Assembly (NCBI GenBank): GCA_964057225.1
Contig: OZ059895.1
Location: 12,338,001 to 12,402,000 of the forward strand
DNA length: 64,000 bases
Source: Auanema rhodensis
Taxonomy: Eukaryota > Animalia > Nematoda
Direction of reading: 5' to 3'
The notes beneath the pieces are model-generated. The model saw only the letters and a list, made by a program, of their open reading frames with translations, did no database searches and was not told the DNA's origin. Shown one piece after another: positions 102 to 47,790 of this stretch. Each line of letters starts with the position of its first letter. The stretch's first letter is position 1. The position numbers and the translations under genes were made by a program.

Positions 102-555
102 GCTTACGACCATACCACGTTGAAAGTACGCCATCCCGTCCGATCTGGCAATTCAAGCAACGTTGGGCCTGTCACGGTCAACGTGAAAATACGAACTTTA
201 TTGTGTTAACGTTTTGTTCGTATTTTTTGTATTAACTCCACCCCCTTTAACCATCTGGTGCCTCCCTATAAAAGGGAGAACCAAATGGTTAAAATTTTTA
301 TGTCTCACTAATTTTGTATTGATTTTAGGAATTTCTTGGAAATTCTTAAATCAATCCACTTGTTCAATTTACTGTTGTTGCATTTGTTGAATAAACCTTT
401 CTTCATTTAACTTGTCTTAACGCATAATACCGCACTCATACGAACCGACTCCATACTTGGACTGATACTTGGAGGTAATAGTCCAGTTGTCAAGCGACAG
501 GGCCCGGTTAGTACTTGGATCGGAGACGGCTTGAAAATCCCGGGTGCCGTAAGCT
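102..555 (+). pseudogene. 5S rRNA gene interrupted by a solo LTR after nt 68
   Basis: 5S nt 1-68 at 102-169 and nt 69-119 at 505-555; GGGCC duplicated at 165-169 and 500-504. Confidence 0.95.
170..499 (+). mobile_element. BEL/Pao solo LTR (330 bp) with 5-bp TSD GGGCC
   Basis: TGTC...GACA termini; TATAAA ~267 and AATAAA 390-395; 3' three-quarters near-identical to the LTR at 8940-9277 that ends a BEL/Pao element. Confidence 0.92.
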
Positions 556-965
556 TTTCAAATTTTTTTAACGATCGTACCACGTTGAAAGTACGCCATG
601 CAGCTGATTTTCAATTTTATCTCTTTCGTAACAAATGTTTTTAATTTTCCAGCAGTTTTACTTAGATAGCTCAACCCAAGGCATCAAAATATCTTCAATC
701 TTATTCCTATATCACAGTTATAAACCAGTAGTTTATGAACCTTCATCTTAACTTTACTGTTTCTATCTATTTCCTATTGAAACAAACATTGTTTAAACAC
801 TATACAACTGTATAACCTTTTCTAATTTATTGTTATTAGATCTCATAAGATTTGATATCATCGAGGGATTTAGATGTAACGTAGAAAATTACATAACTAA
901 CATGAAATTGGAAAAAAAACAATAACGAGGATAAGTATGTAAATCATTGAATATCAGATATTTTC

Positions 966-994
966 GCTTACGACCATATCACGTTGAAAGTACG
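966..994 (+). pseudogene. 5S rRNA 5' fragment (nt 1-29) cut by a MULE terminus
   Basis: GCTTACGACCATATCACGTTGAAAGTACG followed by unrelated sequence. Confidence 0.85.
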
Positions 995-3515
995 GCCTTT
1001 TGACTTTGGCACAGAAATACGTTGACACAATCAAGGCACAGCACTTTGGCACAAGTTATATACTTTGACACAGAAGAAATTTTAAATTAATACTTTGGCA
1101 CAGCTATTATATTTTATTTTTTTTGGGACTTTTCTTTTTAATTTCCAAATTAATATATTTTATCTTATTTTCGAGTTTTTCTATATATTTTTCCGAGTTT
1201 TTCAAAATTTTTATAATTCTTCCTGAAACCAAATATTTATTCATGATTCTCTTAAACAAAGCTCTAAAACTTTTTGAATAATTCTGAAATTTTTAAAAGA
1301 CAAATGAAATTTTCAAAAATTAAGATGATTTGGTTTATTTTGAATTTTTTTGAAACAGTCAATTCAAATGACAAATCACAAGAAGAAATTGTGGAACTGA
1401 AAATTTAATGATGAATAAAAATTCATTAAAAAAAATTAAAATTCAACCAACTTAGCAAGTGCTTGTATTTTTCTCGATTTGTTCTGCTTGCTGAAAATAT
1501 GACCTTTTCTTTTACTCAGTTTGCATCCTTGTTGAGGTTCCATCTGATCCGCTATAATCTGTCTCACGGTTATGCTTTCACTTGCATCCGAGAGAGAATT
1601 GATTATTTCGGATTGCATCTCGTTCTCCAAAGAATTCAAAACAGCAATACTGAAAACTATAAGCATTAGTGAAAGTCCTGTAGTTGTGATTCACCTGTGG
1701 ATACAAAGTCTTAAGTTTGTCTTTTTTTAACGCATAGCAGGGATTGACAACTTAATGTTTTTTTCTGAGAATCGAAAAAAATATGACAACAACTGAAACA
1801 AGCCTTCCGTCAATATTTATGAAAAAAACGCACAAATGTTTGTTATCTGAATCTAAAAGGAAAAAATTGTCTACTGATTTGAACACAGTCATCCTAGACA
1901 CAGCTTTAGCGAAGGCTTCACGGTTTGTTTTATGAACTAAAACATATTTCTGAATATTTTTGTCTTACCGAGAAAAACTTACGATCCATGACCCAGTCGG
2001 GAATAGAGGACAAAAAGTCCGGGAAAAAAAATCTGATAATCCAAAACTTTGCAATAGATGAGTTTTTTCAGAAAAGTTCATCCTTTGCCAGGTTGAAAAG
2101 TCTACACCGCATGATGTGGTGAACTTAGACTGCTTACCTATAACAGCATTCACTCGTTCTTTCAACTCTTCTGAATACATGTTTATCAGTCTTAACTGAA
2201 TCAAAAAAAACCTTCATGCATATGCAAAAAATCGTTTAAAAGTTTCTCCGCTGGTTTTTTGGTACAGATTAAAAGTTTTATCTCTGCGTTTTTGCTCTCA
2301 ATTATGTTTGTTGAAACATATTGTATGGGCCATCCAGCCAATAAACGAGAATACATAGAATTGTATTCAAAAAGACTATTGGAGTTCAAAATCAACCTGA
2401 AAAATATTTTTTTTATTATCATTAAGTAAGAATTACCAATTTTTAATGTTTCCTTCAGTTTCCGTTAATAACTTAAACATTTCACGATCATATTCTTCTC
2501 GTTTCAATAGGTTCAATATTCCACTACGAAGAATCTCACCTGTCTGTTTCTGAAACTGTTAACGGTTATTTTTTTTTTAGACCCAAAACACTTTCTTTTT
2601 GAGTAGATTCAAACAATTTTTTTTTAAGATGTTCATAATCAATTAAATTTTTATCCTTCATCAAAGCTGATTTCATATTTGTCAAACGATGAACGGAACA
2701 TCGCAAAAGTTTGGCATCTTTTAAAACGGCTCCCTACATGGTTTATAAATTTTTACAGCTTTAGTGAACTAATACCGTTTGATACACCTGGAACGACTGT
2801 TCACCATCGTGAATGATAGTATTCACAGTTTTGTTAGGGCAGTATTTTTAAAGCTTGCGGTTGATGAAACTGCTCAATTTTTCATGAACTGCTGTTTCCT
2901 TTGATGAGTGTATCATATAGCATAGAAGAATACTGCTATTCTTTCCCGAACTTTTATTTCTGAAAAGATGTTATAGATTATTCAACAAAAATCAACTGAA
3001 CTTGAACGTTTCCGATATACCAAGAACAATGGTAACAAGTTCAGCAGAAGAAAGCTCAAAAGTTGTATCTATCATTAAACGTTTCCAATGCATGGTATAC
3101 TTCCACTTTGATTGCATGTTTGTAAAAAATCATCTAAATGAAAAAGTAATTACGTGAGCATGAGAACTGAAAAAATCTGACTGAAATAAAGAAGTCCATC
3201 TTCTGAATTCATCATCTGAATTTTCTTAACAGCTTCCCTATGGTCTATAACATCAGATAAGTATGGAAAACATTCGTTGAAGCATTTGAAACTATTGGGA
3301 AACCCAACAATAATCGTGAGTTGAACGTCTCCAGATTCTTCTAAAAATGAAAATGAAACAGAACTAGTCAAAAACGTACCTCTAATAATTTCCGGTTCAA
3401 TCTCCTCATTTTTATTAATATTTTGTATATGTCTATCCAATATTGAATGGAAGTTCGTAGCTGACTTCTTACCTATTTTTGTTTTAACATGAGTATCTAC
3501 TCTTCTAGAAATACT
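995..3515 (-). mobile_element. Decayed, truncated Mutator-like (MULE) DNA transposon; only one terminus visible
   Basis: Terminus with about five CTTTGGCACAG-like subterminal repeats (1004-1103). Minus-strand fragments LMIDTTFELS (~3050-3080), IIHDGEQS (~2795-2817), STNIIESKNAEIK (~2280-2317) and a SWIM-like C..F...C.H (~1780-1835) fit a MULE transposase; many stops and frameshifts. Confidence 0.65.
1436..3440 (-). pseudogene. MULE transposase pseudogene fragments
   Basis: Collinear minus-strand ORF pieces (3150-3440, 2201-2422, 1965-2204, 1436-1666) plus DTTF, DGE and TNxxESxN motifs. Confidence 0.55.
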
Positions 3516-3518
3516 CGA

Positions 3519-5205
3519 GACCTATCTCGAGGAGCTTGTCTCCAAGAACTAAATGATTCTATGTGGATTAAAGGACCACAATGGTTAACCCAAACAAAAT
3601 CACTTTGAAGAAATTGAATATGAGCCTATTTGGAATATAACAACCTTGATCGATACCGTTGAACAACAACAAATAACACAAATACCAGTTGAAGATATAT
3701 TTAAATTACGTAGCAACAACTATACCTTACTGAAAACTATAGCTAAATTAAGTAAATTCTTGAGACATTGGATCATAAAAGTTCATCCCACAGCTACAAC
3801 AAGGTTAAATAAGGTAACGCTATTAGATAAAAACTGGCAAACTACAGCTAATGATATTGAGATTATAACCAAATTATTAATAAGTAAAGCACAACAGCAT
3901 GTAACAATAGATCTCCTCACGAAAAAACATGAAGGTTTTGTATTTTTTCTCGATGAAGAAATAATCAGAGTTCGTAGTAGATTGAACAACTCGGAATTAC
4001 CATTTGGAACTCAAAATCCCGTATATCTTCCAAGAGATTCTCCGTAGACAGAACACATAATTATGCATTTACACAGAGAATGCATGCACCAAGGGCGAGA
4101 TTTTGTTCTAACACTCTTGCGTCAAAAATACTTTTTAAGTAGACCATCAAGCATAGTCAGATCAGTTCTCAAAACATGCACAATCTGCAATAGATACAAC
4201 GCTTTGCCGTTTGGAACGTCCTTAATGCCAGCATTGCCTAAGGATAGAGTAATTCTAACAAAACCATTCATGAGTACAGGTTGTGAGTTATTAGGTCCAA
4301 TAACCATAAAGGATGGTAAAAAGATATTTATATGTCTGTTTACTTGTTTAGCTATAAGAGCTATACACCTAGATAGTTTTTGACCAATCAACAAAGGCAT
4401 TCTTAAACGCTTTTGAAAGGTTCATTGGAAGAAGAGGTATTCCAGAAATAATACGAAGTGATAATGGAGGAAACTTCTTATTAAGTGCTAAAGTAATAGA
4501 GTTTTACACAGAAAACCATGAATCAAAAAATGAAAAAACATTAACCAATTATCTTGCCGAAAAGAATATTAAATGGTACTTCAACACACCACAGGCTCCA
4601 TGGAAAGGTGGAACATGGGAAAGACTAGTAGGACTAACAAAGTTAGCACTATACAAAACAATTGGAAATAGATTAATGTCAATTGATGATATACATACAG
4701 TAATTGTAAAAATCGAAACAATTTTGAATACTCGCCCGCTTACACATCCGAACCCATCCAACCTGAACATTTTGCCTATCAGACCTTGTGATTTTTTAAA
4801 CTGTTCCATCAGGTTTACACTTTCTGCAAACGTATCGAATACCCGAATTTATGATAAAACTATCAATAGCAGGACAATACAAACTATAGAGCAAGCCATT
4901 GAAGCAATAGAGTTATCTAACGATATAACTCAATTATTCTGGAAAAAATTCTATTCCGAGTATTTACTTTATCTTAGAGATATTTACAAACACAACAGAA
5001 AACAACCTGCAACGAATGCTAAGAAACCACAAGAAGGAGAAGTTATTATAATACAAAATGATAATTCAAGTAGAGGTAAATGGAAATTAGGACGCATAAT
5101 AGAACTGATAAAAAGTGCAGATGGGGAAGTTAGATCTGCAAAACTAATAACTGGCACTGGTCTTATAACAACTCGTTCATTAAACCACATATATCCACTA
5201 CAAGT
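3519..5205 (+). pseudogene. BEL/Pao pol C-terminus: integrase (HHCC, core) and DUF5641-like domain, disrupted
   Basis: HRECMHQG...CTICNR; SDNGGNF; APWKGGTWERLV; LNTRPL; FWKKFYSEYL...WKLGRI. In-frame stop at 4045-4047 and frameshift near 4375. Confidence 0.9.
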
Positions 5206-7606
5206 GAGAAACGCAGAAGCAGCACCGTTTGCGTCAGAACCTCACTTAATGAGATACAATAAAAAATATCAAGTGAATCTATTTTCAATCACCGGAACGG
5301 TAAAACAAAAAGGAAAGCGGGTTGAAAATGTTGAAAATATTGAACACCTTGAAAACACTCAAGAAAGTGAACAAAATAACGATGTAATACCTCTCGACAT
5401 CTATACACCCAACATGAATATCTTGAACGAAGCAGGAAACGAAAGTGATTCTAATGTTACGAACTTAGAGCAAGCGGAAGATCAAACAAATGAGATAACT
5501 CTGCAAACCGAAAACGAATCCACACCATCAAATCTGAATAGATGGTTCAAAACAAAAACACAAGGTAGTCAAGCAGCGGTAAGAAGTTATTTTAAGAAAA
5601 ATAAAATGAAAACGAATGTTCCAAAAGTAGCTCTTCTTGGAATAATTCCAACGGTTGAGGCTACATGCCAATCCTCTGAATTGCTAACAGCGGAAGCATT
5701 ATATTTCCCTCAATGTAATCCATTAACGACCTTGATAACATTTTTCATACCAATTATACTATTATTTACTATATTAGCAATTTGTAAAAGAGTATTGAAA
5801 GCTTATAAAAATGACCAATATTGGTATAAATTTTTAAATGATAATTGGCAAACGATACTAACCGAAGTTAGAAGTGGAAAACCTGATTCAAAAATTTTAA
5901 CAAGTTCAGACGATGTAGTCGTACAAAAGGAAAACACAGTAACCACGAAGTTTGACAATGTAACTCCAAAATGGAAAAATGATATTCCAGAAACTATTAA
6001 AATTCCAAATTACATGAGAACATCATCATTCACTTCATTACAATTATCCATAGCGCTCATGGTATTATTAATAACAGTGGAATCTTGTTCAAACTCACAT
6101 ATTAAGCATTCAATAAATATAATTTGCATTAATCGAACAAATTGTTATCAAGAATATGATAATGAAATCATTTTCAATAAAGGCATAAGAGACGCTTGCT
6201 TAGAATTCATTTATCAAAATAAATCTATCGGCAAAATAGAAATAACGAAAAAACCAACAGAAAACATTTGCCAGAAAAGTACGCTATATTATACTCGAGA
6301 AAGCACAATTCAATACAAAACTCAATATTCCTGTTATGGAACAGGATCTTGTAATCACACTTGTGAAGCTATAAATCCTATTGGACAATTACAAGAATTT
6401 GATAAAAAAGAAGGACCAACACAAGTTGGTTGTGCTAGGCGATGTGGCTCTCTTTTCTGCGGATGTTGGTCTTTAGAAGACGGTTGCTCATTCTATCAAA
6501 CCAAATTCAAACCAATCAATGAAATAGTTTATGAAATAGTAGAATGTGATTCTTGGGAAATAATTATATCATTAGAGGTAAAGTATGATCTATTTAAACA
6601 CAAAGCCAATATTAATATTCTTTTAAAACCATACGACACTGTTAATTTTCCAAACTTTAATATAAGCTCAATCTCCCATATTGTGCCACCAACCCGATAT
6701 TTGAACACCAAATATGCATTATCAACCATAAACAGTTACTACATGGAACCTCATACTATGAGTGAAGTAGCATGCAAAACCAAATATCAAACTACAAATG
6801 AATTTAACTCTTGTAAAATACTGAAGTTATGTAACTGTAAAATATCAAAAAGGGAAGAGCTAACATGTACCTGTCCATCTGATAATATTTTCAATCAGGC
6901 GAACTTATTACCCATGAACACCAAGAACACCTTAATTACCATGAAAGAAAACAAGTTAACACTTATTCCTCAAACTGATGAATCAACTGTTGTTCTTCAA
7001 CTACAAGGGAATGTGTCGTCTCGTACTTTCCTGTACGACTTTCCTTGTCGACCGGAATTTAAAAAACTTTCCGGGTGTCACAGCTGTAGAAGAACGGCTG
7101 TTGCCGAGTTTATGTGTATATCACAAAAGGATTCTTGGATCACAATGCAATGTAGTGAGAACATATACATGATTGAATGCGCTCCACACATGCCACTTAC
7201 AGCTGTGGAATATTATTCAGAGAATTCTGAAATCTATGAAGAATGCTTTGTAACATGTGCCAATGAAAAACACCGCATGATCATACAAGGAACCTTACAA
7301 TGAGATAGTAAAATTCCAGACGTTGAAAAAACAATCATGAACATTGTGACAAATGCCAACACCTGGAGAAACATTCTAAATGTAGTTAAAACAAACTGGG
7401 CATTATCAATATGCTTACTCCTGATAATTGTTTTTATACCAGTATTATCTTATATAATAGGGGTACAAACAATCATTATAATAATCATAAGCATACAAAA
7501 ACTAATCATTCAGATAATAAAAATTGTGATGATAATTACATCATTAATGAGAAAAATGCTCAGAAATCCTAGACACAGAGCTGAGTCTAGCACAAATAAA
7601 AATTAA
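4676..7606 (+). pseudogene. Integrase C-terminus fused to env: short Gn remnant plus phlebovirus Gc-like class II fusion glycoprotein with C-terminal TM
   Basis: Signal-like LSIALMVLLITVES then Cys-rich ectodomain with CYGTGSC and CGSLFCGCWSLEDGCSFY (fusion-loop-like). Premature TGA at 7301-7303; the 7337-7606 hydrophobic TM ORF is in the same frame. Confidence 0.82.
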
Positions 7607-7737
7607 AACAGTAATCTTACTGTAGTAATAATAAAAAAAAATAAAAAAAACTTTATTAATTAGCTATAAGAACAATTTAAAAACACTTAAAAAAAAAAAA
7701 AAAAAAAACAAAAACACTATATATTTGAAGTTACAAG

Positions 7738-8310
<573 letters not shown>

Positions 8311-8445
8311 CTGCAACAACTACAACTATAAAAAAAATTTTTTTTTGAATCTAAAGAAAACAATAGAAAAATTCAAGGGGGAGGTACAAAAATCTAGTAT
8401 AAATAGAGATAAATTTTACAAATACTTCAGTTGCGGACGATCATT

Positions 8446-8931
8446 ATGACCGAACCTACTTCGGTCAGAATGAACAATAACCTCCTATCAATCATCGATG
8501 ATTTGAAGCTTTCAAATATGGAGCAGCTTCCAAGCGAACCGCTAAAACTGAAGCATATTATTATTCTTGAAGAAAAGAGTCGTCTTCCTGCGTCCAACAT
8601 TGAAGCTGCTCTGGAGCAACTAAACGCAAAGATTGATCAACTCTATTTGCAATCGCAGCTTCTCCTCAACAATACCAACAATCTAGCCAACCTAAAGAAC
8701 CCTAACTCATGCGTATTCTGTGAATCAACTCCTGCCGACGGCCATCGCTCGTTCAACTGTCCAGTATATCCAACTGCCCACCACAGATCACTTAGATGTA
8801 ACCATCTAAGAATCTGTGTGAAATGCTTGGCCCCCGCGCACATGGACGACTGCAACATAACCTGCAGTCGCTGTCAAGGAACAGATCATCATTCTGCTCT
8901 CTGCTCAGCAAACAAAAAAAAAAGACTTTAA
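8446..8931 (+). CDS. BEL 3' accessory ORF: coiled-coil plus Gag-like triple Cys/His knuckle and basic tail
   Basis: Intact ORF with CVFC...H...C, CVKC...H...C, CSRC...HHSALC and KKKRL; upstream TATAAA (~8398) and TTCAG acceptor (8426-8430). Confidence 0.8.
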   Translation: MTEPTSVRMNNNLLSIIDDLKLSNMEQLPSEPLKLKHIIILEEKSRLPASNIEAALEQLNAKIDQLYLQSQLLLNNTNNLANLKNPNSCVFCESTPADGHRSFNCPVYPTAHHRSLRCNHLRICVKCLAPAHMDDCNITCSRCQGTDHHSALCSANKKKRL

Positions 8932-8939
8932 GCGCGGAC

Positions 8940-9277
8940 TGTCACGGTCGACGTGAAAGAATATGTAAGTTTCATACTGATTTTCACTCATTCTTACTTT
9001 GTTTTGCAAAAACATTCTCCTCCCCTTGATCCATCTGGTGCCTCCCTATAAAAGGGAGAACCAGATGGTTAAAACTCATGTCTCACCAATTTTGTATTGA
9101 TTTTAGGATTTTCTAGGAAATTCTAAAATCAATCCACTTGTTCACTTTACTGTTGTTGCATTTGTTGAATAAACCTTTCTTCATTTAACTTGTCTTAACG
9201 CATAATACCGCACTCATACGAACCAACTCCATACTTGGACTGATACTTGGAGGTAAAAGTCCAGTTGTCAAGCGACA
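8940..9277 (+). repeat. BEL/Pao 3' LTR (338 bp)
   Basis: TGTC...GACA; homologous to 170-499; followed by GGGCC and the 5S 3' half. Confidence 0.92.
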
Positions 9278-9333
9278 GGGCCCGGTTAGTACTTGGATCG
9301 GAGACGGCTTGGGAATCCCGGGTGCCGTAAGCT
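9278..9333 (+). pseudogene. 5S rRNA 3' half (nt 64-119) flanking the BEL insertion
   Basis: GGGCCCGGTTAGTACTTGG...GTAAGCT directly after the LTR. Confidence 0.92.
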
Positions 9334-9743: not shown

Positions 9744-9862
9744 GCTTACGACCATACCACGTTGAAAGTACGCCATCCCGTCCGATCTGGCAAGTCAAGC
9801 AACGTTGGGCCCGGTTAGTACTTGGATCGGAGACGGCTTGGGAATCCCGGGTGCCGTAAGCT
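9744..9862 (+). rRNA. 5S rRNA
   Basis: Full 119 nt nematode-type 5S with C-box and TTTT terminator. Confidence 0.95.
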
Positions 9863-19427: not shown

Positions 19428-22307
19428 TCACGATAAAATATGAGACAAGATATGTTTCCGGAAAGAATGTTTTGTACGAAGGCTGACTATGGCTTCAGGA
19501 AGAGAGTTCCATAGATTTACAGTTCTGTATTCAATTCCATTCCTTGTTTCTGTCCTCCATAGAGTAGGATGAGCTAGATTCCATTGGTGTCTGCGCAGAG
19601 AATTCAGATTCTTGATAATGAAAAAAGATTGTGAGTTTCCTGTGGCTTCTATTGTTATATGAGCAAAATAGAACAATAGATCAGAAAGAACCCTCCTAGT
19701 TATCAGATCTTCAGTTTTAAGATAAGATAGCTGATCTTTGTAAGTTAGGTCAAGACCGGCTCGGCCAAAGATTGCTTTAAAAAACTTTTTCTGAACTTTT
19801 TCTATTCGTTGTTTGCCTGCAATGTTCTGTGGTGACCAGATAACTGATCCATATTCAAGTATGGGTCGGACGTAACAGCTGAAAAGTTTGAACAATAATT
19901 TAGGACATTTAGAGTAGAAACAACGGAGAATAGTTCGGCATTTGACGGCCGCAATACTACAAATTGAATTAATGTGTTTTTCGAAAGACAAGTTATTTTC
20001 CGTCCAAATACCCAGATCTTTGTATGCAGATACTATAGAGAGAGATGAATCGCCAAAAGTGAAATTAGTAATGTTGTGATAATTAGATGATTTGTTAGAG
20101 ACAATCATTACTTTAGATTTTTCGGTGTTGACTTTCATTTTGTTATCATGACACCATTTGTAAAGAGAATTAAGAGCATTTTGAAGGCTCTCAGGGTTAC
20201 AACTATGAAGTTTTAGATCATCAGCATATAAAATGGGATGAACATCGGATGTGAATAAGGAAGTTATGTCGTTTATGTAAAACAGAAACAGTAGAGGGCC
20301 AAGAACCGTTCCTTGAGGAACCCCACATGTAAGACTAACAGGGTCGGATAGACTTTTGTTGATGAGTACAGAGTAAGAACGGTTTTGGATAAAAGATCCA
20401 AGAAAATTAAGAAGAGACCCACGAATTCCAATAGATTTCAATTTTGCAAAGAGAATGGAGTGATCAATGAGATCGAATGCTTTTGAGAAATCAATAAACG
20501 CAACAAAAACTGTATTTTTATCATCAATAAGTGATCTCCATTTGATATGGCTGGAAACAAGGGCTGTTACAGTGCTGCGTTTAGGAAGAAAAGCGTGCTG
20601 AACATTGGAAATGCTGCCCGAGGATACACCAAAATGAAGAAGGGGAGATCGAATAAGTCGTTCAAAGACTTTAGATAAACTTGGGGTTAGTGAGATTGGA
20701 CGGTAATTAGAAGGATCAGAAGGGTTGCCTTTCTTGAAAACCGGACGTATCCAAGCTGTTTTCCAGTCAGGAGGACAAGAAGAAAAAACAAGGAGGTTAT
20801 GAAAAATAAACGAGAGAGGATTGCAGAGGGTGCCTGCACATTGTTTGAGAAAATAGTACGGAATTCCATCCGGAGAAGTAGATGCGCGCGAAGGAAGGTG
20901 AGAAAGAATGTTGAAAACCTTTTCAGGGGAGATGTCGATGAAGTCAATGACTGATGGAGAGTAATTGAGAAGATGAGAGTAAGTGGAAGATGAAGAGGAT
21001 TTGACAGCAAAGACGGAGGAAAAAATTTCAGCTTTGTCTACGTCAGAGAAAACCAAAGTTTCGTTGATTTGTAGAGTAGGGATATCAGAAGAGTCTTTAC
21101 CAAGTCGTTCGCGACAGAATTGAAAAAATGCTTTTGAATTGTTGGTAGAAGCTATGTTGTTTTCATCAATGGCAGATTTGAGTTTGATGAGTTTATCTAA
21201 GGTGACAGATAGCTTTTTGCGAAGAAGCTCATCCTGAGCGAAAAGAGAGTTGCTTAACCGGTTAACACGATTGTTAAGTTTCTGAATGTCACGATCAAGT
21301 TTTTTTCTTTTCTTTGCCTTTTTGAATGGGACACAGCTTTGAATTATTGATTGGACAATTGCAATAAACTTAGAATAGGAAGTTATAGCGTTTAGACCAC
21401 ATAATTCAGTAGCGAAGTCAATGCCAGCTAAAAGGCTATTTATTTTACCATAATCGGCCGAGAAAAAGTTACGACTAGAAAAAGAGGAAGAGAGAGAGGA
21501 GGGCCTGGAAGTAGCAACTTTGTTGATTTGAGCAAATGTGAGAGGATCCAAAATAATGTTGAAGAAAACCGAGTAATGATCAGATTGGCCAAGAGGGCTA
21601 TTGCGAGAAATGTTCTCTACACAGTGAACACTGTTGGTGATAATGTAATCCAAGATGTTTTTACCTCTGGTTGGGAAAGTAACTAATTGACTGGATGAAG
21701 ACTGTTGAAGAAAGTTGAGAATAGATGAAGTAGAGGGGGAACTGCTTGACGAATGGATGAGATCCCAGTCAATGTGAGGGAAATTAAGATCGCCTGTTAA
21801 GAAAAACCTGCGGTTCGAGATAAGAGTTTGAAATTCGGTTAGAAAAAATAGAAAGTCAGAGTGCTGAGATGATGGAGAACGATAGCAGATTGAGAAAACG
21901 ACGTCAGAAGGTATAATGAGAACATTTAGGTATTGAACAGTTGATTGAGAAGGAGAGCATGAGAGAAGACGACTATTAATGTGTTTTGTAATATAGAGGA
22001 GGACTCCTCCTCCTCGAGAAGTTGATCTGTCATCACGGAAAATACAGTAAGAATCTCTCAAAGGAAGGGAGCTAGAGTTGAAATCAGGAAACAGCCAGGT
22101 CTCAGATATAGCAATAATGTCTGGACAGAGAGTCGAATAAACAATTGGTATTAAGTGTAATTTATTGACAATAGATCGTGCGTTATAACAAGAGACTGTA
22201 ATTTTACTACATGCAGCAGTAGAGATTGTTGATTGGAAATTAACGAAAGGATGTTTGGCTGGGCAGATTGGACGGGGAATTAGGCAAAGTAGATGTATTT
22301 CTAACAA
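19428..22307 (-). CDS. LINE ORF2: APE endonuclease plus reverse transcriptase
   Basis: YNARSI, ISETWL, GDLN, LDYI, SDH; YRPISL, FIDFSKAFD, GVPQGTVLGP, YADD; uninterrupted 959 codons (start codon uncertain). Confidence 0.95.
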   Translation of the reverse strand: MLEIHLLCLIPRPICPAKHPFVNFQSTISTAACSKITVSCYNARSIVNKLHLIPIVYSTLCPDIIAISETWLFPDFNSSSLPLRDSYCIFRDDRSTSRGGGVLLYITKHINSRLLSCSPSQSTVQYLNVLIIPSDVVFSICYRSPSSQHSDFLFFLTEFQTLISNRRFFLTGDLNFPHIDWDLIHSSSSSPSTSSILNFLQQSSSSQLVTFPTRGKNILDYIITNSVHCVENISRNSPLGQSDHYSVFFNIILDPLTFAQINKVATSRPSSLSSSFSSRNFFSADYGKINSLLAGIDFATELCGLNAITSYSKFIAIVQSIIQSCVPFKKAKKRKKLDRDIQKLNNRVNRLSNSLFAQDELLRKKLSVTLDKLIKLKSAIDENNIASTNNSKAFFQFCRERLGKDSSDIPTLQINETLVFSDVDKAEIFSSVFAVKSSSSSTYSHLLNYSPSVIDFIDISPEKVFNILSHLPSRASTSPDGIPYYFLKQCAGTLCNPLSFIFHNLLVFSSCPPDWKTAWIRPVFKKGNPSDPSNYRPISLTPSLSKVFERLIRSPLLHFGVSSGSISNVQHAFLPKRSTVTALVSSHIKWRSLIDDKNTVFVAFIDFSKAFDLIDHSILFAKLKSIGIRGSLLNFLGSFIQNRSYSVLINKSLSDPVSLTCGVPQGTVLGPLLFLFYINDITSLFTSDVHPILYADDLKLHSCNPESLQNALNSLYKWCHDNKMKVNTEKSKVMIVSNKSSNYHNITNFTFGDSSLSIVSAYKDLGIWTENNLSFEKHINSICSIAAVKCRTILRCFYSKCPKLLFKLFSCYVRPILEYGSVIWSPQNIAGKQRIEKVQKKFFKAIFGRAGLDLTYKDQLSYLKTEDLITRRVLSDLLFYFAHITIEATGNSQSFFIIKNLNSLRRHQWNLAHPTLWRTETRNGIEYRTVNLWNSLPEAIVSLRTKHSFRKHILSHILS

Positions 22308-25072: not shown

Positions 25073-26675
25073 CAGTACCGGCCAAAAAGATATAGCCTCC
25101 ATTGTTTTCAGATATATCATGAAATTAAGGATATTCAAAAATATTTTTTTAAAAGGGATAATAATAATTTAAAAGTGCTTATCAAATAGCTGCTGGTTAC
25201 TAAGAAATTTAAAAGATTTAATAAACAAGAAGGACATATCTGTACTTTGTTACCTTTTTCGGGATAATGCATGAAAAGAATCATCTCAATTTTTTCAATG
25301 CTTTTCAAATGTTTAGTGTTTTTTTTGCATAGTTTTTGTATTAAAGAAGTTTCAATTCTCAATCTAGATCATGCCACGTACAAGAGGAGCCAAAAATATT
25401 CCTGAAGATGTCCAAAAAAGCATAGTAAATGGGCGTACTATGGGTTTGACTCATCGTCAACTTTCGCAGCAGTTCAACATCAGCAGAAAAGCTGTGACCA
25501 ACATGTTAACAAGATGGAGGGTCAACCAAGGATTTGTTCACAAGAAAAGCACCGGAAGACCAAGAATCACTACTGCAATATGTGATAGGAACATTGTGCG
25601 TATCAGTCGCAATGATCCAAGAAAGACGGCTACACAAGTTCTAGAAGAATTAGAAGGCTTGAACTCAGTAAAACCTTCGTTACGGACTATCAGAAGAAGG
25701 TTAGGACAAGCTGGATTGAATGGACGTAGGCCTGTAAAAAAACCACTAATCTCTGAGAAGAACAGAAGACTGAGAGTACAGTGGGCGAAAGAGCATGTTC
25801 AATGGACAAGAGAACAATGGAATAAAGTTTTATTCTCAGATGAATCAAAGTTCTCGTTGTTTGGATCCGATGGCATACACTGGATACGAAGGCCAATCAA
25901 TCGAAGATTTGATCCAAAATACCAGATACCCACAATCAAGCATGGTGGTGGCTCATGCATTGTGTGGGGCTGTTTTAGCTCTCAAGGAACAGGGCCTCTT
26001 CACCACATAAAGACGATTATGGACCGTCAAGTCTACAAGGATATTCTACAGAACGTCATGTTACCATATGCAAAGGATGCAATTGGTTCAAGCTTCATTT
26101 TTCAAGAAGATAACGATCCAAAACATCGGGCGCAGGAAGTTAGAATGTGGCAGCATGAACAAAATATTGAGCGTTTGGATTGGCCTAGCCAAAGCCCAGA
26201 CCTAAATCCCATTGAACACCTTTGGGAAGAGTTGGCACGTCGGCTTATAGGAAAAACAGCAAGAAACATCAATGAAAAATTTTCTCAATTGCAGGAGGAA
26301 TGGGAAAAAATCCCTATAGATAGAATCAATACACTCCTTGACTCAATGAAAACAAGATGCCAGCGAGTAATAGAAGCGAGAGGGTACGCTACGAAGTATT
26401 AAATTTTGTTCAAGTTGTATGAAATAACTATATTTGTTTATTAATTTTTTCATCATTTTGCGAGTTGGTGCAGTAGTTGCATTTGAAGAAAACAAACGTG
26501 TTAATGAATAAAAGTCTAAAAAACATTTTTTTTTCTTAGTTTACGAGAAAATTCATACCCGAACACTAAAAAGTTGTTATGTTTCGCAAAATTATGAAAA
26601 AGTAATGTCTAATAACAGCAAACAAAAAAAAAATTCAAAAAAGATCAAAAGGCTATATCTTTTTGGCCGGTACTG
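25073..26675 (+). mobile_element. Tc1-family DNA transposon (1603 bp)
   Basis: Perfect 26-bp TIRs CAGTACCGGCCAAAAAGATATAGCCT; TA TSD at 25071-25072 and 26676-26677. Confidence 0.97.
25371..26402 (+). CDS. Tc1-like DD34E transposase, intact and intronless, 343 aa
   Basis: [35 protein letters not shown]. Confidence 0.97.
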
Positions 26676-32544: not shown

Positions 32545-33438
32545 TTTCAAATTTTTTTAACGATCATAGCACGTTGAAAGAACGCCATGCATCTGATTTT
32601 CAATTTTATCTCTTCCGTAACAAATGTTTTTAATTTTCCAGCAGTTTTACTTAGATAGCTCAACCCAAGACATCAAAATATCTTTAATCTTATTTCTATA
32701 TTACATTTATAAACCAGTAGTTTATGAACCTTCATCTTAACTTTACTGTTTCTATCTATTTCCTATTGAAACAAACATTGTTTAAACACTATACAACTGT
32801 GAAACCTTTTTTAATTTATTGTATTTGGAGCTCATAAGATTTGATATCATCGAGGGATTTAGATGTAACGTAGAAAATTACATAACTAACATGAAATTGG
32901 AAAAAAATCAATAACGAGGATAAGTATGTAAGTCATTGAAAACTTACGACCATACCACGTTGAAAGTACGCCATGCAGCTGATTTTCAATTTTATCTCTT
33001 CCGTAACAAATGTTTTCAATTTTCCAGCAGTTTTACTTAGATAGCTCAACCCAAGGCATCAAAATATCTTCAATCTTATTTCTATATTACATTTATAAAC
33101 CAGTAGTTTATGAACCTTCATCTTAACTTTACTGTTTCTATCTATTTCCTATTGAAACAAACGTTGTTTAAACACTATACAACTGTGAAACCTTTTTTAA
33201 TTTATTGTATTTGGAGCTCATAAGATTTGATATCATCGAGGGATTTAGATGTAACGTAGAAAATAACATAACTAACATGAAATTGGAACGTTCCATTTGA
33301 TTGCCCTAGGGTAAAATCAAATTTCGAAAACTTGGATGACTGATTATTGTTGTTTGTTTGATGAGAAAAAAATGGGAAAATGATGCAAAAGTATAAATAA
33401 AATAATTATGATAAAAAAAATGAATTTTCAAACTTGTT

Positions 33439-36400
33439 TTAGATAGTTGTTGGTCCTCCTATCACTGTTGAAGGTCGTTTCTTTCGTTCAACCGATGTGT
33501 TTGGTAAATTGATATGGGCATCAGGTATCTGAGAGCGTGTAAGCCTACTTTTAGGTTTTAAAGGGGGTATCACGCTGTTGTACCTTATTGGTACGTGAAA
33601 CGGTTTTGGAGGAGTAATCGGATTTTTGTCTTCTAAACCGAGTGCCAATTTGAAAGCTGAGCTCCATCTTTTGATTGTAGGTAACTCTTTTTGTCTTTCT
33701 TCGTAGAGCTCTTGTCTTGTTTCTTCTCCAATTTTGTCGACCAATTGTTGGAATTGGTTGTTTTCTTCTTTGTTCGTAGATGTCTTGTCTGCTGTATCTA
33801 GTCCAGATTCCGATTGATAACTTTCTTGTTGTCTTTCCAACGTATCTTCCTGCGGTGTTATTGTTTCTTTAGTTGTTATTATAGGTCGGCTTTGTTCGTA
33901 GAACTCGTCCTCGTTATCGCTGTCCGAATCAGAAATTGGGGGCGTGGCTTGACCGTTGTTCTGAGCGCGCGTATTGACCTGATCGTGCCGGGACCTGTTG
34001 CTATAAATAGCGGATCCCGCGTCATTTCTGCCGTGCTCGCTTTCCTCGATGTTATTGTCATCGGGTGGAAAGTATCTTATATTATTCTTATGAGCCCGTA
34101 TTCTATTCCCGTCGTCATCTGCTAATATGACATTATTTTTATTTATTTCTTTTATGAGGTACGGTCCATCACTGACTGCTTGCAGTTTGTTGGTGGGCTT
34201 TGCCCGTTTGACGAGAGCTGTGTTATCCACGTAGAGTTCTCGTTCTTGTATCTTGTGTGCCTCGTCGTATTTCTTCTTCATCTTCTCATTGTTCCTTGTT
34301 ATCCTTTCGTATATTTTCTCATGTAAATCTCCTGTGGGTTTGAGAGTGGGTGCGGGAGTGTCCAGGTTGTGGTCGATTGGTAGTCGCGCTGCCTGACCAA
34401 AGATACAATCGTAGGGCGGTGTGCGCGTTGTGGCATCAGGTAGCCTGTTGAGTGTGAATACTATCTTAGGAGTATATCATCCCAATTGTCCTGTTCCGTA
34501 TTTACGTACGACGTTAGTGCTTCTTCTAGTGTTCTGTGTAGTCGTTCCACTTGTCCATTTGCATTCTTGTAATATGGCATAGTTGTATGATGCTCGGAAC
34601 CTAGTTGTTCGCACATTGTTTTGAATTCGTGAGAAACAAAATTGGATCCGTTGTCCGTTATGATCCTTTTTGGTGGTCCGAAAACAAAGAACAGGTTTTT
34701 CTTAATTGCTGTTATGATTTCTTCTGATGTTTGTCTTAATAATGGTGTTGCTATTATCCATTTGGAGAACGCGTCCTGTATTGATAAGATATATCTGTTC
34801 CCGTTTTGTGTTCGTGGTAGTGGTCCGAGAATGTCCATGTGAACTCTTTCCCAAGGTTGTGAAACGGTGGGAAAGTTTCTCATGGGTTCCACCGTTGCTT
34901 CATGCGGGTTATTTTTCCTTTTTGCGCACTGAAGACATCTGTTGACGTAGTTGGTGATATCTTCTTGCATTCCTGTCCATGTATAACGGCGTAGAATTGA
35001 GTCATGTGTTTTGTTGATTCCTAGATGAGCTTCTAGTAATGGGTCCTTATGAAACTTATCGATTACTGTAGTAATTGTTAGATCATTGGGTAGAACGGCT
35101 CGAGGTGTTTGGAATGCTGTTTTTGGCTTTGCATAGAGAATATTATTTTGAACTATATATCGATCTGTTAGTTGCCTTCCTGCTGTTTTGTTCTGAATCT
35201 TTTCTTTTGTTTCCATGATCCATTCTGTTTCCTCTTGAATTGTCCGAAGGTCCGTGATAGTTGTAATAGTAGAGATTTGATGCGTGGGAGATTCTTTCGT
35301 TTTCTTCTTTCTTTCCTTCGCTTTGTTGATTTCGTCTTCGAAGTATCTTGATAATGCGTCACAAACGCTATTAAGACGTGGGCGATAGATAATTTCAATA
35401 TCATACTCTTGGAGTACTATTTGAAATTTGGCTAGTCTTCCTATGAGGTCTTTTCTTGTCATAAGGCTAGTTAAGGGTCTATGATCGGTTATGATTTTGA
35501 TCGGTGCTCCTAAGATGTAGGTGCGAAACTGATGAACTGCGAAAATTAGGGCTAAGGCTTCGATCTCAATCGGGGGGTAGTTCCTTTCTGCTTTGTTTAG
35601 TTTACGGCTAGCGAAAGCTATTGGGTGCAGTGGTTCTTGATCATCCGCAGATTGCAATAGAACTGCTCCTACTGCAATTATGCTTCCGTCGCTTTCAACT
35701 ACGTATGGTCGTTTTGCTCTAGGTGCCTGAAGAACCGGTGCTTGACAAAGGGCTTTCTTCAGGTGTTGGAAAGATTTTTCTTCTTTGTCTCCCCATGTGA
35801 AAGCTTTATCCTTTTTTGTGAGGTCGTAGAGAGGTGAGGCAATTCCTGCGGCATTTTTGATGAATCTTCGAAAGTAGTTAACGACGCCCATGAAAGCTCT
35901 GACTCCTGTTGTTGACTTTGGTCTGGGGTAGTCTCTGATGGCTTTAATTTTCTGAGGGTCCGGTTTTATTCCCTCATATCCGACTATAAATCCGAGAAAC
36001 TTGACTTCTCTTTGTCCAAAGGTGCATTTCTTTAGCTTAATTTTGAATCCTAGCTCTATTGCTACTCTCAAAACTTCTTCGATATCTTGAAGATGTTGTG
36101 TGGTTGATTCTGATATAAACAGAAGATCGTCTAGATATACGAAGAGTTTGCAGCGTACATGTTGTTGTAGGTACCGTACTGCGTTTTGGAATGTATGTGG
36201 GGCTCCACAGAGTCCCATGGGCATTCGACAGTATTGATATGTACCACTAGTTGTAGTAAATGCTGTTAAATGTCGATCTTCTTTACGCAGAGGTATTTGG
36301 AAGAATCCTGATACCAAATCAAAGTTAGTGAAGATGCATGCTCCTGCTGCTAGATCGAGAATATCTTGTATGTTTGAAATGACGTATATCTGCTTTAGTG

Positions 36401-36917
36401 TTATGGCATTTAATGCTCGAAAATCCGTAACAAAACGGTATGTTTTGTCCTTCTTTTTGACGAGTATAACGGGACTTGTGGTAATAGAAATTGATGGTTC
36501 TATTATACCTTGTTCGAGCATTTCCTCCACCTGTTTTTCGACTTCTTCTTGTTGAGTTAGAGGGATCCTGTATGTGATTTGAAATGATGGAAATTTTCCT
36601 GGTATGATAGGGATATTATGTTCCACTGGTCCTTTAAAAAGTCCGATATTGCGATCCTCGTTCAAAAAAGCTTCCTTATTTCTAAGTACTATTTTCTTTA
36701 ATTCTTGTCTTTCCAATTGGGTGAAGATGGTGTTTGTTACGTCGAGATCCTTTATGAAGTCGTCTGGAAAGTATGGTAGTTGTTCTTCCCATCTTGCTTC
36801 CGGTGGGACGTATTGTCCTTTTTGTTCTTTGATATCTTTTGGGATAGCGTAAGCAGTTCCGATTCCTTGATTTGTTTTAATTTTGATTGTTTCGGGTGAG
36901 ATATTTGTAGCGAATAT
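33439..36917 (-). pseudogene. Gypsy pol (RT, RNase H, integrase with GPY and long tail); one frameshift
   Basis: YRFVTDFRALN, MPMGL, YLDD, SDGS...GAVL, EIEALA, TDHRPL, DALSR, HHCC, VHMDILGP, TDNGSNF, VERLHRTL. In frame with the upstream ORF after one TAG; 1-nt frameshift ~34468. Confidence 0.93.
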
Positions 36918-39900
36918 CTAAACCCCGTATCCTGTTGGCGTGAAAGTTGTAGGGGCGAAAGTCATTTTTCCTATTCGTTGTGAACTACTTAGAAAAGCTT
37001 GTGCGTATGATGCTGGATCGTCTACTTCCAACGTGAGCGATCTGGTTTCTCCTGGGTAAAACTGTTCAGTTTCCAGGCTTACTACATGAGCTATCGTGTG
37101 GTTCTCGGTCCACGGTGAGTAGTCTTGTGCTAGAGGTACTATTGTATCTCCGACTAGCAATGAATTCTGAAGTGGTCGCAATGATGTATTTATTCCTATT
37201 TTGCTGAGGGCTTCTATAAAGTCTATTCCTAATAAGATAGGTGCTGGGCAGTGGTTGTTGGCAGAAATCAGTATTTTGTGCTCAATCTCTGTTTTTCCAA
37301 TAACAATTGGAAGTCTTGTGTAGCCCAGGAAGGAAAACCGTGATTTGTTTGCTACGATAGCTGTTGTCTTTTCACCAACCATCGTTGCTACCGGTAGTTG
37401 TTGAAATGTGCTTTCCTTCATATATGATATAGAAGCTCCTGTGTCCCATAAAGCAGTAAAGATCTGATTGTGGATGGAGAGAGGTACGAAAGGTAGTCGT
37501 GATCCTCCGATGTAGTTAATCCTTGATTCTTTCATGGCGTATCGTGGTAGATAGGCTAGAAAGTCGTTGTCTGATAGTGGAGCGTCGGGATCGTATCGGG
37601 AGATTCTTGAATAGAATTTGTTTTGTTGAGATTTATTCAGTGGTTGTAATTGCTGAAGTTCGATTTCTTCATTTTTTTGCCTTGGTTCTTCTTCTTCTTC
37701 TTTGAATGTTATTTGATTGATTGGTATCCTTGTGGTACATTCATATATTTTTAATGCCCAGATGGTGGCAGTTATAAGTCCTATTGCGACGAGAATTCCC
37801 CCAATAATGGCTAGTGTCCTTAGTATCCATGCTGTAATTGATTCTCCTACATATTCGAAGAAATTTGTGATTTGTTTTTCTGCGTTGTTTGATATGTTAT
37901 CTGCTAACATTAATGTCGTTCCAACTGTTCCTCCTATAATGCCTATTGGATTTAGATCAGAGAATCCAGACTGTTTGGAGACTGGTTTCAGCTTTCCTGG
38001 CAGAGTGGCTTGTAAGGATGCTAAGCTCGATCCGTAGGAGATAGCCAGTGCCATTGGAAATGTTGACTCCGTGAGGTTTGAAAATATGTTGGAATTGTTG
38101 AACTTAATGTGATCAATTTTTACAGATGTGAGTTCATCCGAAAATGAGAAGTGAGTTACATTCAATGTTGAATTATCTTTCATCCATTGATTGTTTATTT
38201 TGTAGGGATCTGATGTAGCCATATCGCATGCTATGATGTGAGCATATGGTGTCAAATCTCTTGATCCTGGTGTAATGAATAGTTTGCCGTGATGTTCCGT
38301 GTCTACAGGCGTCTCCAGGTAACATTTATCGTCTCGTTTGTGATCCGAATATACATGTGTTATTTGTACAGGGGTGCATGGCATGACGTAGATGAGATGT
38401 TCTCCGACGAATTTGGCTGAAATGTCCTGTCGACGAAGCATAGTGCGAATTCCTATGGTCGGATTAATTTGCAGGATTGCCCACCAGGTAAGTAGCTGTT
38501 TATTTTGCATTCTGCAAACGCTTTTCTTTGTTATTTGGAAAGCTTGTAAGATTTCCTCTTCGAGTTTTGACGTAGAGTATTGGAGGTGAGACCTTGTATC
38601 TTGTTGTCGTAGTTGATCATCGTATTTTTGAATAATATCTGCTCGTGTTTGTAGGAAATTGAGGTGTGCTTGTGATCCTGTGTGAGATTTAATTTCCTCT
38701 ACCGGTTGAGTTGTTGTTGCTCGTTTCGTGGTAATCCGAGTTGTGGGAATTGTCCTAGGAGGTTCTCTGCGAGGTGTGGTAGTGAGAGGACGTGGTGGTG
38801 GAGTTACTGGAGTTGTTGTACTCTGGTAATAATGATATCTCCTTGGTGTGGTTGTGAATTGAGGTAAAGGTGTCCGATAAGTAGTAGTTGTCGGATCAAC
38901 TGTGGTTGCAGGGGTTCTAGTGGTTGTTGTAGTAGTAGTAGTTGTGGTAGTGGTTGTCGTAGGACTAGCACCCGGTGACTCAATGAGCTGAAGATATGTT
39001 TGTTGAAATAATGAGCTGTCTTCTTCCGTGATGGGTCTGGCTGTAGGTAGTGTTTTCGGGAATCCGTAGTTTTGTGCGTGTCCGTTGAAGATGAGAGTAT
39101 AGTTGGGAAAGGTAATCGCTGAAGAGTTTGACTGTCTTGTGAGATCAGCCCATTTCTTGTTTTCTGCTTCTCTTTCCTCTTTTGATATCCGGCTTAGACG
39201 ATTGTTTTGAGCTAGGTAGTCGAGAAATTTTTGTATTTCGTCTATCTGGGTGTAGACCTGTGGGTCTGTACGTGATCTAGGCAGTTTTGTCATTCTGGGT
39301 GGGTAAAGTTGGTATAAGTATTCCTCCAACGATGGAATAGTTTCTCCTGTAGCCAGAGTTGTAGGTGTCTGTGCTATTTCGAGTGCTATTTGTCTTGCTC
39401 GTTCGAGATAGTCGCCTTTGTGGTTTAGTAATCGTGTGGCAAAGTCGCTGATAGTGATTTGCTTGCTGAGTTTTGCCGTAATTTCTGATGGTAATAGATG
39501 TTCAATGGCGATTTCTGTGGAAAGTCGAATCTCGGCTTCTGCGAGTGTGTGTAGGATAACCATGTTGATATCGGTGTAGTTGTGCCATAAGAGTCGATAT
39601 TTTAGTTTTGATGCTTCCAGTTGTAGGAATTTGATGAGCCCTATGTGTACGCTAGATGTTTTGAGGTAGTCTATAAGGTTATAGGTACTATCTAGTCTTT
39701 TACGATTTCGATATGCTTGGTACATTGGTAGTAATCCTGTAGAACTGTCTGTGAGGCGAAGTGATTGATAGATAGTGATGTTGAAGAATCTCGTAGGGTA
39801 CTCCTGTGGTGCTTTTCTCTTTTGACGTCGGGGTTTTAACTCGTTGATGGAAATGTACGTACCCCTGTCAGTTGAATAGATGTTCTTATTCATACATCTT

Positions 39901-43256: not shown

Positions 43257-43274
43257 ATCTCGGTGGAACCTCCA
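43257..43274 (-). promoter_or_regulatory. Primer-binding site complementary to the tRNA-Gln 3' end
   Basis: TGGAGGTTCCACCGAGAT directly abuts the LTR; matches recalled eukaryotic tRNA-Gln ...ATCTCGGTGGAACCT-CCA. Confidence 0.8.
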
Positions 43275-46355: not shown

Positions 46356-46474
46356 GCTTACGACCATACCACGTTGAAAGTACGCCATCCCGTCCGATCT
46401 GGCAAGTCAAGCAACGTTGGGCCCGGTTAGTACTTGGATCGGAGACGGCTTGGGAATCCCGGGTGCCGTAAGCT
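46356..46474 (+). rRNA. 5S rRNA
   Basis: Full-length copy. Confidence 0.95.
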
Positions 46475-47671: not shown

Positions 47672-47790
47672 GCTTACGACCATACCACGTTGAAAGTACG
47701 CCATCCCGTCCGATCTGGCAAGTCAAGCAACGTTGGGCCCGGTTAGTACTTGGATCGGAGACGGCTTGGGAATCCCGGGTGCCGTAAGCT
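47672..47790 (+). rRNA. 5S rRNA
   Basis: Full-length copy. Confidence 0.95.

What the first reader, a model, noticed from the sequence alone, without database searches (positions are those of the whole stretch)
165..9282. Candidate 5S-rDNA site-specific, enveloped BEL/Pao retrotransposon family
Seen: two LTRs of one family (170-499 and 8940-9277) abut the same 5S nucleotide in the same orientation (GGGCC, nt 64-68, inside the Pol III internal control region). The solo LTR has a perfect GGGCC TSD. The two LTRs are near-identical over their 3' ~250 bp but essentially unalignable over U3 nt ~20-80. Inference: these are two LTR variants that inserted independently at one base, not one insertion copied by array recombination. 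Known: nucleotide-precise rDNA targeting is typical of non-LTR elements (R1/R2), and Pol III-directed targeting of Ty3; I know of no such case for BEL/Pao.
Basis: partly seen in the sequence, partly recalled or inferred. Interest (0 to 1): 0.88.

Follow-up and report, generated by a model that had tools for sequence, protein, structure and literature searches.

The report
Retrovirus-like LTRs inside 5S genes
Two consecutive 5S rRNA genes in a decaying 5S array are interrupted at exactly the same base by two different versions of the LTR of a nematode-type enveloped BEL/Pao element, which may mean site-specific integration but could also come from one insertion copied within the array.

Summary
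A 330-bp solo LTR (170-499) splits a 5S gene after nt 68 and has a perfect 5-bp duplication, GGGCC. A 338-bp LTR (8940-9277) meets 5S nt 64 at an identical right junction, in the same orientation, in the next array unit. The LTRs are 95% identical over the first 19 nt, 41% over about 65 nt of U3, then 90% and 97%.

The coding remnant is a BEL/Pao integrase fused to a phlebovirus-Gc-like envelope. This is the known nematode Atlas/Cer13 kind, so the envelope is not new.

The second copy is not a simple 3' end:
- the 5' LTR, most of gag, PR, RT and RNase H are missing;
- a gag nucleocapsid fragment, not env, abuts the LTR;
- the left junction is lost.

The flanks share no private variants. Against that, the two units are neighbours, the array duplicates blocks, and n=2.

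No other copy of the family exists in the searchable collections, so specificity across the whole family is untested. I give about 0.45 to two independent integrations (a strong preference for this site) and about 0.4 to one integration plus unit duplication and LTR exchange. No LTR element with targeting of one exact position in a gene turned up in the papers I read.

The parts
102..169 (+). 5S rRNA gene of array unit A, nt 1-68 (left half). Its last 5 nt (165-169, GGGCC) are the left copy of the target-site duplication.
   Evidence: Rfam partial match; sequence read; unit map
170..499 (+). Solo LTR, 330 bp, TG...CA. It carries a TATA-like box and an AATAAA signal on the + strand.
500..555 (+). 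5S gene of unit A, nt 64-119 (right half). 500-504 (GGGCC) is the right copy of the duplication.
966..994 (+). Stub of the 5S gene of the next unit (unit B), nt 1 to about 29. The gene breaks off here.
995..3524 (.). Unidentified DNA that replaces 5S nt ~30-68 and the 5' part of the element. It has four ACTTTGGCACA-like repeats at its left end, a chain of short minus-strand ORFs, no Pfam family and no repeat elsewhere in the window.
3525..7606 (+). Remnant of the polyprotein gene, given as one broken gene. It holds the linker before integrase, the integrase (zinc-binding, core and DUF5641 domains, about 4050-5200) and the envelope (Gc-like class II fusion domain 6086-6991). It matches residues 1233-2544 of a 2589-residue relative. 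The breaks are a 5' truncation of about 1230 codons, 2 frame changes and 2 in-frame stops.
7738..8310 (-). Three-exon small gene model on the opposite strand (exons 8310-8209, 7972-7808, 7764-7738; GTAAG...TTGCAG introns; 97 codons in phase). Its first intron holds the (ATAA)n array 7989-8193. It has no family and its relation to the element is unknown.
8431..8931 (+). Gag fragment: a 166-codon open frame ending 8 nt before the LTR. Its three Cys/His knuckles (about 8701-8925) match the nucleocapsid region (residues ~385-490) of relatives' polyproteins.
   Evidence: three knuckles as a belpaovirus hallmark: bioRxiv 10.64898/2026.03.22.711591
8940..9277 (+). Second LTR, 338 bp. It belongs to the same family as 170-499 but has a different U3 segment.
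9278..9333 (+). 5S gene of unit B, nt 64-119, starting with GGGCC. The right junction is identical to that of the solo LTR.

Best explanation
A family of enveloped BEL/Pao elements (the nematode Atlas/Cer13-like belpaovirus kind) integrated twice into this 5S array, as two LTR variants. Both integrations are at the same position (after 5S nt 68, duplicating nt 64-68) and in the same orientation.

One copy later collapsed to a solo LTR by LTR-LTR recombination. The other was rearranged and truncated.

This reading implies that the family's integrase strongly prefers this site. The simplest mechanism (inferred) is direct sequence preference for the GC-rich palindrome GGGCCC. In this AT-rich DNA that hexamer occurs only at this 5S position and is offered in many copies. 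Insertions into a redundant gene array are also tolerated. Tethering to a factor bound to the 5S internal control region is the alternative mechanism, and is also inferred.

Shown: the anatomy, the junctions, the TSD, the element type and the LTR differences. Inferred: that the two integrations were independent, and any mechanism.
For: - The right junctions and orientation are identical, and the solo LTR has a perfect 5-bp TSD.
- The U3 segment of about 65 columns is only 41% identical, while the termini and R/U5 are 95-97% identical. Divergence falls from U3 to U5, as between lineages that diverged while active, not as uniform decay in place.
- The 465-bp host flanks downstream of the two LTRs differ by 5.4%. 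They are not each other's nearest neighbours among 25 units and share no private variant.
- GGGCCC occurs 25 times in the 64 kb, always at this 5S site.
- The LTR belongs to a belpaovirus. A nucleocapsid fragment abuts it, and the integrase-env remnant lies upstream on the same strand.
Against: - There are only two cases, and they sit in consecutive units. If insertions hit the ~27 full genes of the window at random, adjacency would be uncommon (roughly 2 in 27, my estimate).
- The array demonstrably copies multi-unit blocks: 4.5 kb at 99.85% identity.
- The left junction of the second copy is lost, so its TSD cannot be checked.
- Divergence of the alignable LTR part (5.4%) equals that of the flanks (5.4%), as expected if both were copied together.
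- The heterogeneity between LTR segments 86-185 and 186-340 is only marginal (Fisher p = 0.065).
- No LTR retrotransposon with a fixed position inside a gene is reported in the papers read, so the prior is low.
- No further copy could be examined.
Confidence: 0.45

Rival explanations
1. One integration into a 5S gene, spread within the array. The interrupted unit was duplicated next to itself by unequal exchange. One copy became (or already was) a solo LTR. In the other copy the LTR was partly replaced by exchange or gene conversion with a different variant of the family from elsewhere. The crossover inside the LTR gave a foreign U3 joined to a resident R/U5 and brought in the rearranged internal DNA on the left. 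No site preference is needed.
For: - The two interrupted units are consecutive.
- Block duplication is active in this array.
- An identical junction and orientation follow automatically.
- LTR similarity rises towards the 3' end that touches the shared flank (97.4% over the last 155 nt).
- The left side of the second copy is a patchwork: a 5S stub, unidentified DNA, a truncated pol-env and a gag fragment.
- Overall LTR divergence and flank divergence are equal.
Against: - The flanks are not sister sequences and share no private variants, although conversion among units could have erased that signal.
- The scenario needs several steps: duplication, exchange with another variant, then rearrangement.
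- The conserved 19-nt LTR terminus upstream of the variable block fits subfamily variation better than a random crossover.
Confidence: 0.4
2. The LTR family is not the LTR of the integrase-env remnant. The LTRs would then belong to another element, for example a short non-autonomous one that carries only a gag-like piece. The pol-env fragment would be an unrelated neighbour in a transposon graveyard.
For: - There is no 5' LTR, primer-binding site or clear polypurine tract to tie the LTR to the pol-env remnant.
- 1.3 kb of unrelated-looking DNA separates env from the gag fragment. It contains an A-rich tract, a microsatellite and an opposite-strand gene model.
- The array holds several other elements.
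Against: - The open frame that abuts the LTR has the three-knuckle nucleocapsid typical of belpaoviruses. It matches the gag region of the same relatives that match the pol-env remnant.
- All pieces are on the same strand.
- The 5-bp duplication and TG...CA ends fit an integrase-made insertion.
Confidence: 0.1
3. Assembly artefact: a mis-joined or wrongly expanded tandem array created the second junction.
For: Tandem 5S arrays with nested repeats are hard to assemble, and the left side of the second copy is a patchwork.
Against: The two LTRs and their flanks differ in sequence, so neither is a copy made by the assembler. The junction with 5S is clean to the base.
Confidence: 0.05

Closest known systems
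Atlas virus clade / Cer13-like endogenous belpaoviruses (BEL/Pao) of nematodes
   Same: - An integrase with a DUF5641 tail, fused in frame to a phlebovirus-like Gc class II fusion envelope.
- A nucleocapsid with three Cys/His knuckles.
- The best solved-structure match is the A. ceylanicum endogenous Gc (7a4a, E 1.7e-24).
- The nearest proteins come from Auanema, Ancylostoma, Oesophagostomum and Heligmosomoides.
   Different: - It is only about 32% identical to the nearest relative, so it is a separate family.
- The copy here is a broken, rearranged remnant.
- No insertion-site preference is mentioned for that clade in the two papers read: 'target site' and 'rDNA' have zero occurrences.
Mutsu (non-LTR) and Dada-5S (DNA transposon), the known 5S-gene-specific elements
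   Same: They insert at a fixed position inside the multicopy 5S gene, so the cost of insertion is buffered by gene redundancy (PMC3706591, PMC8869645, PMC10946416).
   Different: They use an endonuclease or a transposase of other classes. Here the insertion has LTR ends and a 5-bp duplication made by a retroviral-type integrase. Specificity here rests on two cases only.
R1/R2 of 28S rDNA
   Same: Same nucleotide and same orientation in units of a tandem rRNA gene array, with inserted units clustered.
   Different: R1/R2 are non-LTR elements that use target-primed reverse transcription, and their specificity is documented over hundreds of copies and species (my knowledge).
Ty3 (and Ty1, DGLT-A, TRE5-A): Pol III-directed integration
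   Same: An LTR element whose integrase is guided to Pol III genes.
   Different: Those elements insert next to the gene (at or upstream of the start site, or at a distance) through bound transcription factors, not inside the gene (for the general point; Ty3 details from my knowledge). Here the site is +68, inside the gene.
Cassandra / Ajax (TRIMs with 5S-derived sequence inside their LTRs)
   Same: Physical linkage of LTR and 5S sequence (PMC10886601).
   Different: Here the 5S halves are ordinary array units with their spacers on both sides and a target duplication. The LTR sits in the gene; the gene does not sit in the LTR.

Membership tests
BEL/Pao (Belpaoviridae) LTR retrotransposon | Integrase with zinc-binding and core domains followed by the BEL/Pao-typical C-terminal DUF5641 domain | tested here: met
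   Pfam Integrase_H2C2, rve (partial) and DUF5641. Relatives found with it carry Peptidase_A17 + RVT_1 + DUF5641.
BEL/Pao (Belpaoviridae) LTR retrotransposon | Pao-type protease (Peptidase_A17) and RT/RNase H upstream of the integrase | tested here: inconclusive
   That part of the element is absent from the window. tblastn with nine full-length relatives finds nothing upstream of 3525.
BEL/Pao (Belpaoviridae) LTR retrotransposon | Nucleocapsid with three Cys/His zinc knuckles | tested here: met
   There are three knuckles in the frame that abuts the second LTR, homologous to the gag region of relatives. The hallmark is stated in the paper read.
BEL/Pao (Belpaoviridae) LTR retrotransposon | LTRs with TG...CA ends and a short (4-6 bp) target duplication | tested here: met
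   Solo LTR 170-499 has TG...CA ends and a 5-bp GGGCC duplication. The 4-6 bp range is from my knowledge.
Atlas-virus-like clade | Phlebovirus-like Gc (class II) envelope encoded in the same polyprotein as Pol | tested here: met
   Phlebovirus_G2 at E 3e-47, in the same open frame as DUF5641. PDB 7a4a is the top hit.
Atlas-virus-like clade | Intact Gag-Pol-Env polyprotein with identical LTRs | tested here: not met
   This copy is a remnant: 5' truncation, 2 frame changes, 2 in-frame stops, no 5' LTR. That concerns the state of this copy, not its kinship.
Site-specific elements of multicopy RNA genes (behaviour like R2, Mutsu, Dada-5S) | Copies from independent events share one nucleotide position and orientation in the target gene | tested here: inconclusive
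   Both LTRs in the window (2 of 2) are at 5S nt 64-68 in the same orientation. Independence is suggested by U3 and the flanks, but the units are adjacent and block duplication exists.
Site-specific elements of multicopy RNA genes (behaviour like R2, Mutsu, Dada-5S) | Few or no copies outside the target | not testable with these tools
   The source genome and the family are absent from the collections.
Ty3-like Pol III start-site targeting | Insertion within a few bases of the Pol III transcription start | tested here: not met
   The insertion is after nt 68 of the gene.

The most novel reading that the evidence does not exclude
This belpaovirus family is a true 5S-rDNA specialist: most of its copies genome-wide sit after 5S nt 68 in one orientation. 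It would be the first LTR/integrase-type retroelement with R2- or Mutsu-like targeting of a fixed nucleotide inside a multicopy RNA gene.
Probability: 0.3. Interest if true: 0.85.

Novelty: new variant of a known kind. Interest (0 to 1): 0.55.

Why it matters
In the papers read, strict insertion at one position inside a multicopy RNA gene is reported only for non-LTR retrotransposons and Dada DNA transposons. Retroviral-type integrases are known for regional or factor-tethered preferences, not for a fixed nucleotide.

If this family really aims at 5S nt 64-68, it would show that an integrase can evolve that precision. It would also give a natural example of the 'safe harbour' strategy in a retrovirus-like, enveloped element.

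If instead one insertion was copied by the array, the locus is an ordinary transposon graveyard. It would then hold a new but broken member of a known nematode endogenous-virus clade.

Tried and rejected
Searches for other copies or for the host, all without result:
1. Exact look-ups of the window's longest element ORF and of a Tc1 transposase: not on record.
2. Word-based protein searches. The longest ORF gave only two weak hits, the named one from a cnidarian. The gag fragment gave none. A LINE ORF used to place the host gave at best 34% identity.
3. An exhaustive HMMER search. The nearest relatives are only about 32% identical, and all named ones are rhabditid nematodes. 'Nematode host' is therefore an inference, and no same-family copy is available.
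4. One metagenome scan with a pattern from the host 5S gene (upstream of the site, so blind to occupancy). It returned one unrelated, uninterrupted 5S gene.

Ideas rejected:
5. 5S sequence carried inside the LTR (Cassandra/Ajax type). The halves are array units with spacers and a duplication.
6. 5S RNA as the reverse-transcription primer. The flank is sense-strand 5S on both sides of a solo LTR.
7. Ty3-like start-site targeting. The site is +68.
8. 995-3524 as degenerate gag-PR-RT. There is no tblastn or Pfam signal on either strand.
9. Shared private flank variants as proof of one event. None were found.

Left without a family: the small opposite-strand gene model was searched exon by exon in Pfam and matched nothing. 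The joined model was not searched.

Not looked up or typed: phlebovirus sequences and the named nematode endogenous viruses (Atlas, Cer13). Likeness to them rests on the named hits that came back.
Full report
WHAT THE WINDOW IS. The 64 kb are a 5S rDNA array of about 30% G+C. Rfam finds 25 5S genes on the + strand. The array is made of 529-bp full units and roughly 400-bp units in which 5S nt 34 to spacer position 134 are deleted. It is invaded by several mobile elements:
- a Maverick/Polinton-like element with long inverted ends, about 10.9-30.9 kb, carrying a LINE and a Tc1-like transposon;
- a Gypsy-like element on the minus strand, about 33.3-43.7 kb;
- the element of the finding at the left end.

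THE OBSERVATION. It holds in every particular. The 5S gene that starts at 102 runs to nt 68 (169). Next comes a 330-bp TG...CA LTR (170-499). The gene then resumes at nt 64 (500), so GGGCC is duplicated. Without the LTR and one GGGCC, the sequence is the intact gene seen at 9744-9862.

The second LTR (8940-9277, 338 bp) is followed by 5S nt 64 onward. The junction is identical to the base and the orientation is the same. No third LTR copy is in the window.

Identity between the two LTRs by segment is 95% (first 19 nt), 41% (next ~65 columns), 90% (next 100) and 97.4% (last 155). The two variable stretches align barely better than shuffled sequence.

WHAT THE ELEMENT IS. The coding remnant on the + strand has an integrase (zinc-binding, core and DUF5641 domains). 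In the same open frame it has a Phlebovirus_G2 fusion domain at E 3e-47. The best solved structure is 7a4a, the Gc of an endogenous virus of the hookworm Ancylostoma ceylanicum. Phenuivirus Gc proteins follow.

An exhaustive search found 4531 relatives. The nearest are only about 32% identical. All named ones come from rhabditid nematodes: Auanema, Ancylostoma, Oesophagostomum and Heligmosomoides. This is the published Atlas/Cer13-like belpaovirus kind, with a single Gag-Pol-Env polyprotein, a GN-GC envelope and three zinc knuckles in NC. The envelope is therefore not new. The host is probably a nematode, which is an inference. None of the window's transposon proteins has a close relative in the collections.

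STATE OF THE COPY. Homology to a 2589-residue relative covers only its residues 1233-2544, at window 3525-7453. The 5' LTR, most of gag, the protease, RT and RNase H are absent. Within the remnant I count 2 frame changes and 2 in-frame stops. I do not give their places.

To the left of the remnant lies 2.5 kb of unidentified DNA (995-3524). It abuts a 5S stub that ends at about nt 29.

To the right of env come an A-rich tract, an (ATAA)n array and an intact-looking three-exon gene model on the opposite strand.

After these comes a 166-codon open frame that ends 8 nt before the second LTR. Its three Cys/His knuckles match the nucleocapsid part (residues ~385-490) of more than twenty relatives. 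So the second LTR is preceded by a gag piece, not by env and a polypurine tract. The copy is rearranged or internally deleted, or the family carries an extra NC-like frame. The left junction of this copy is lost, so only its right junction can be compared.

ONE EVENT OR TWO. Evidence for two events:
- The U3 block is replaced while the terminal 19 nt and R/U5 are kept. Divergence falls from U3 to U5, as between lineages that diverged while active.
- The 465-bp host flanks differ by 5.4% (the array median is 4.1%). They are not nearest neighbours and share no private variant.

Evidence for one event:
- The two units are consecutive.
- The array copies 4.5-kb blocks at 99.85% identity.
- Overall LTR divergence equals flank divergence.
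- An exchange within the LTR between a resident solo LTR and another variant would give a foreign U3, a resident R/U5, the same right junction and a patchwork on the left. That is what is seen.
- The statistical contrast between LTR segments is only marginal (p = 0.065).

I cannot separate the two readings with two copies. I put independent integration at about 0.45 and the single-event history at about 0.4.

HOW TARGETING COULD WORK (inferred). The hexamer GGGCCC occurs 25 times in the window, always at this 5S position. In AT-rich DNA, a moderate integrase preference for this GC-rich palindrome would be enough, given the many copies of the gene and the harmlessness of hitting a redundant array. 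Tethering to a protein bound to the internal control region is the alternative. By Xenopus numbering (my knowledge, not tested here), the site lies between box A and the intermediate element. An inserted gene would be split between promoter elements and should be dead.

COMPARISON WITH WHAT IS KNOWN. Fixed-position insertion in 5S genes is described for Mutsu (non-LTR) and Dada-5S (DNA transposon). Reviews and primary papers state that such strictness was seen only in non-LTR elements, and later in Dada. LTR elements are guided near targets, not into a fixed base. Cassandra and Ajax carry 5S sequence inside their LTRs, which is the reverse arrangement from this one. A 5S-specific belpaovirus would therefore be new, but the case is unproven.

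STEPS LEFT OUT. I did not fetch the DNA around the relatives' genes, and I did not scan public collections with the element's own LTR. The joined three-exon model was not searched; its exons were searched singly by reference.

2. In my reasoning I once named the position of an in-frame stop.
3. Some of their ends coincide with breaks.
This report gives only the outer bounds of the broken gene and counts of breaks.

Noticed in passing
window 7738-8310 (minus strand): This is an intact-looking three-exon gene model (34 + 55 + 8 codons, in phase). Its introns are GTAAG...TTGCAG, 236 nt (holding the (ATAA)n array) and 43 nt. It encodes a small acidic protein with two CxxC...H motifs. It lies antisense between env and the gag fragment and matches no Pfam family.
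   Followed up: partly
window 33289-43660 (minus strand): A Gypsy-like element. Its 1789-residue frame carries a gag domain, then a herpesvirus-gB/Monjiviricetes-type fusion glycoprotein domain, then the protease, which is an unusual order. A separate RT-RNaseH-integrase frame follows. Only a 25-nt terminal direct repeat was found.
   Followed up: partly
window ~10870-30900: A Maverick/Polinton-like element: split protein-primed DNA polymerase B, an rve integrase, and inverted ends in four segments of 112-156 nt at 91-98%. It sits in the 5S array with a nested LINE (19428-22307, minus) and an intact-looking Tc1-like transposase (25371-26402).
   Followed up: partly
window 43.7-64 kb (e.g. 44769-45167, 45169-45567): About half of the array units are ~400-bp deletion variants in which 5S nt 1-33 is joined to spacer position 135. 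The deletion lies between a 29-nt motif of the gene (nt 5-33) and its copy in the spacer. These units are pseudogenes.
   Followed up: partly
window 46356-50904 vs 51779-56326: A 4.5-kb multi-unit block is duplicated at 99.85% identity, which indicates higher-order repeat structure and recent block duplication in the array.
   Followed up: yes
window 995-3524: Unidentified 2.5-kb DNA between a 5S stub and the truncated element. It has four ACTTTGGCACA-like repeats in its first 110 nt and a chain of short minus-strand open frames. It has no family and no other copy in the window. It may be a fragment of a DNA transposon.
   Followed up: partly
window 186-226: The variable U3 segment of the solo LTR contains an 11-nt inverted repeat (186-196 / 216-226) that is absent from the other LTR.
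   Followed up: no
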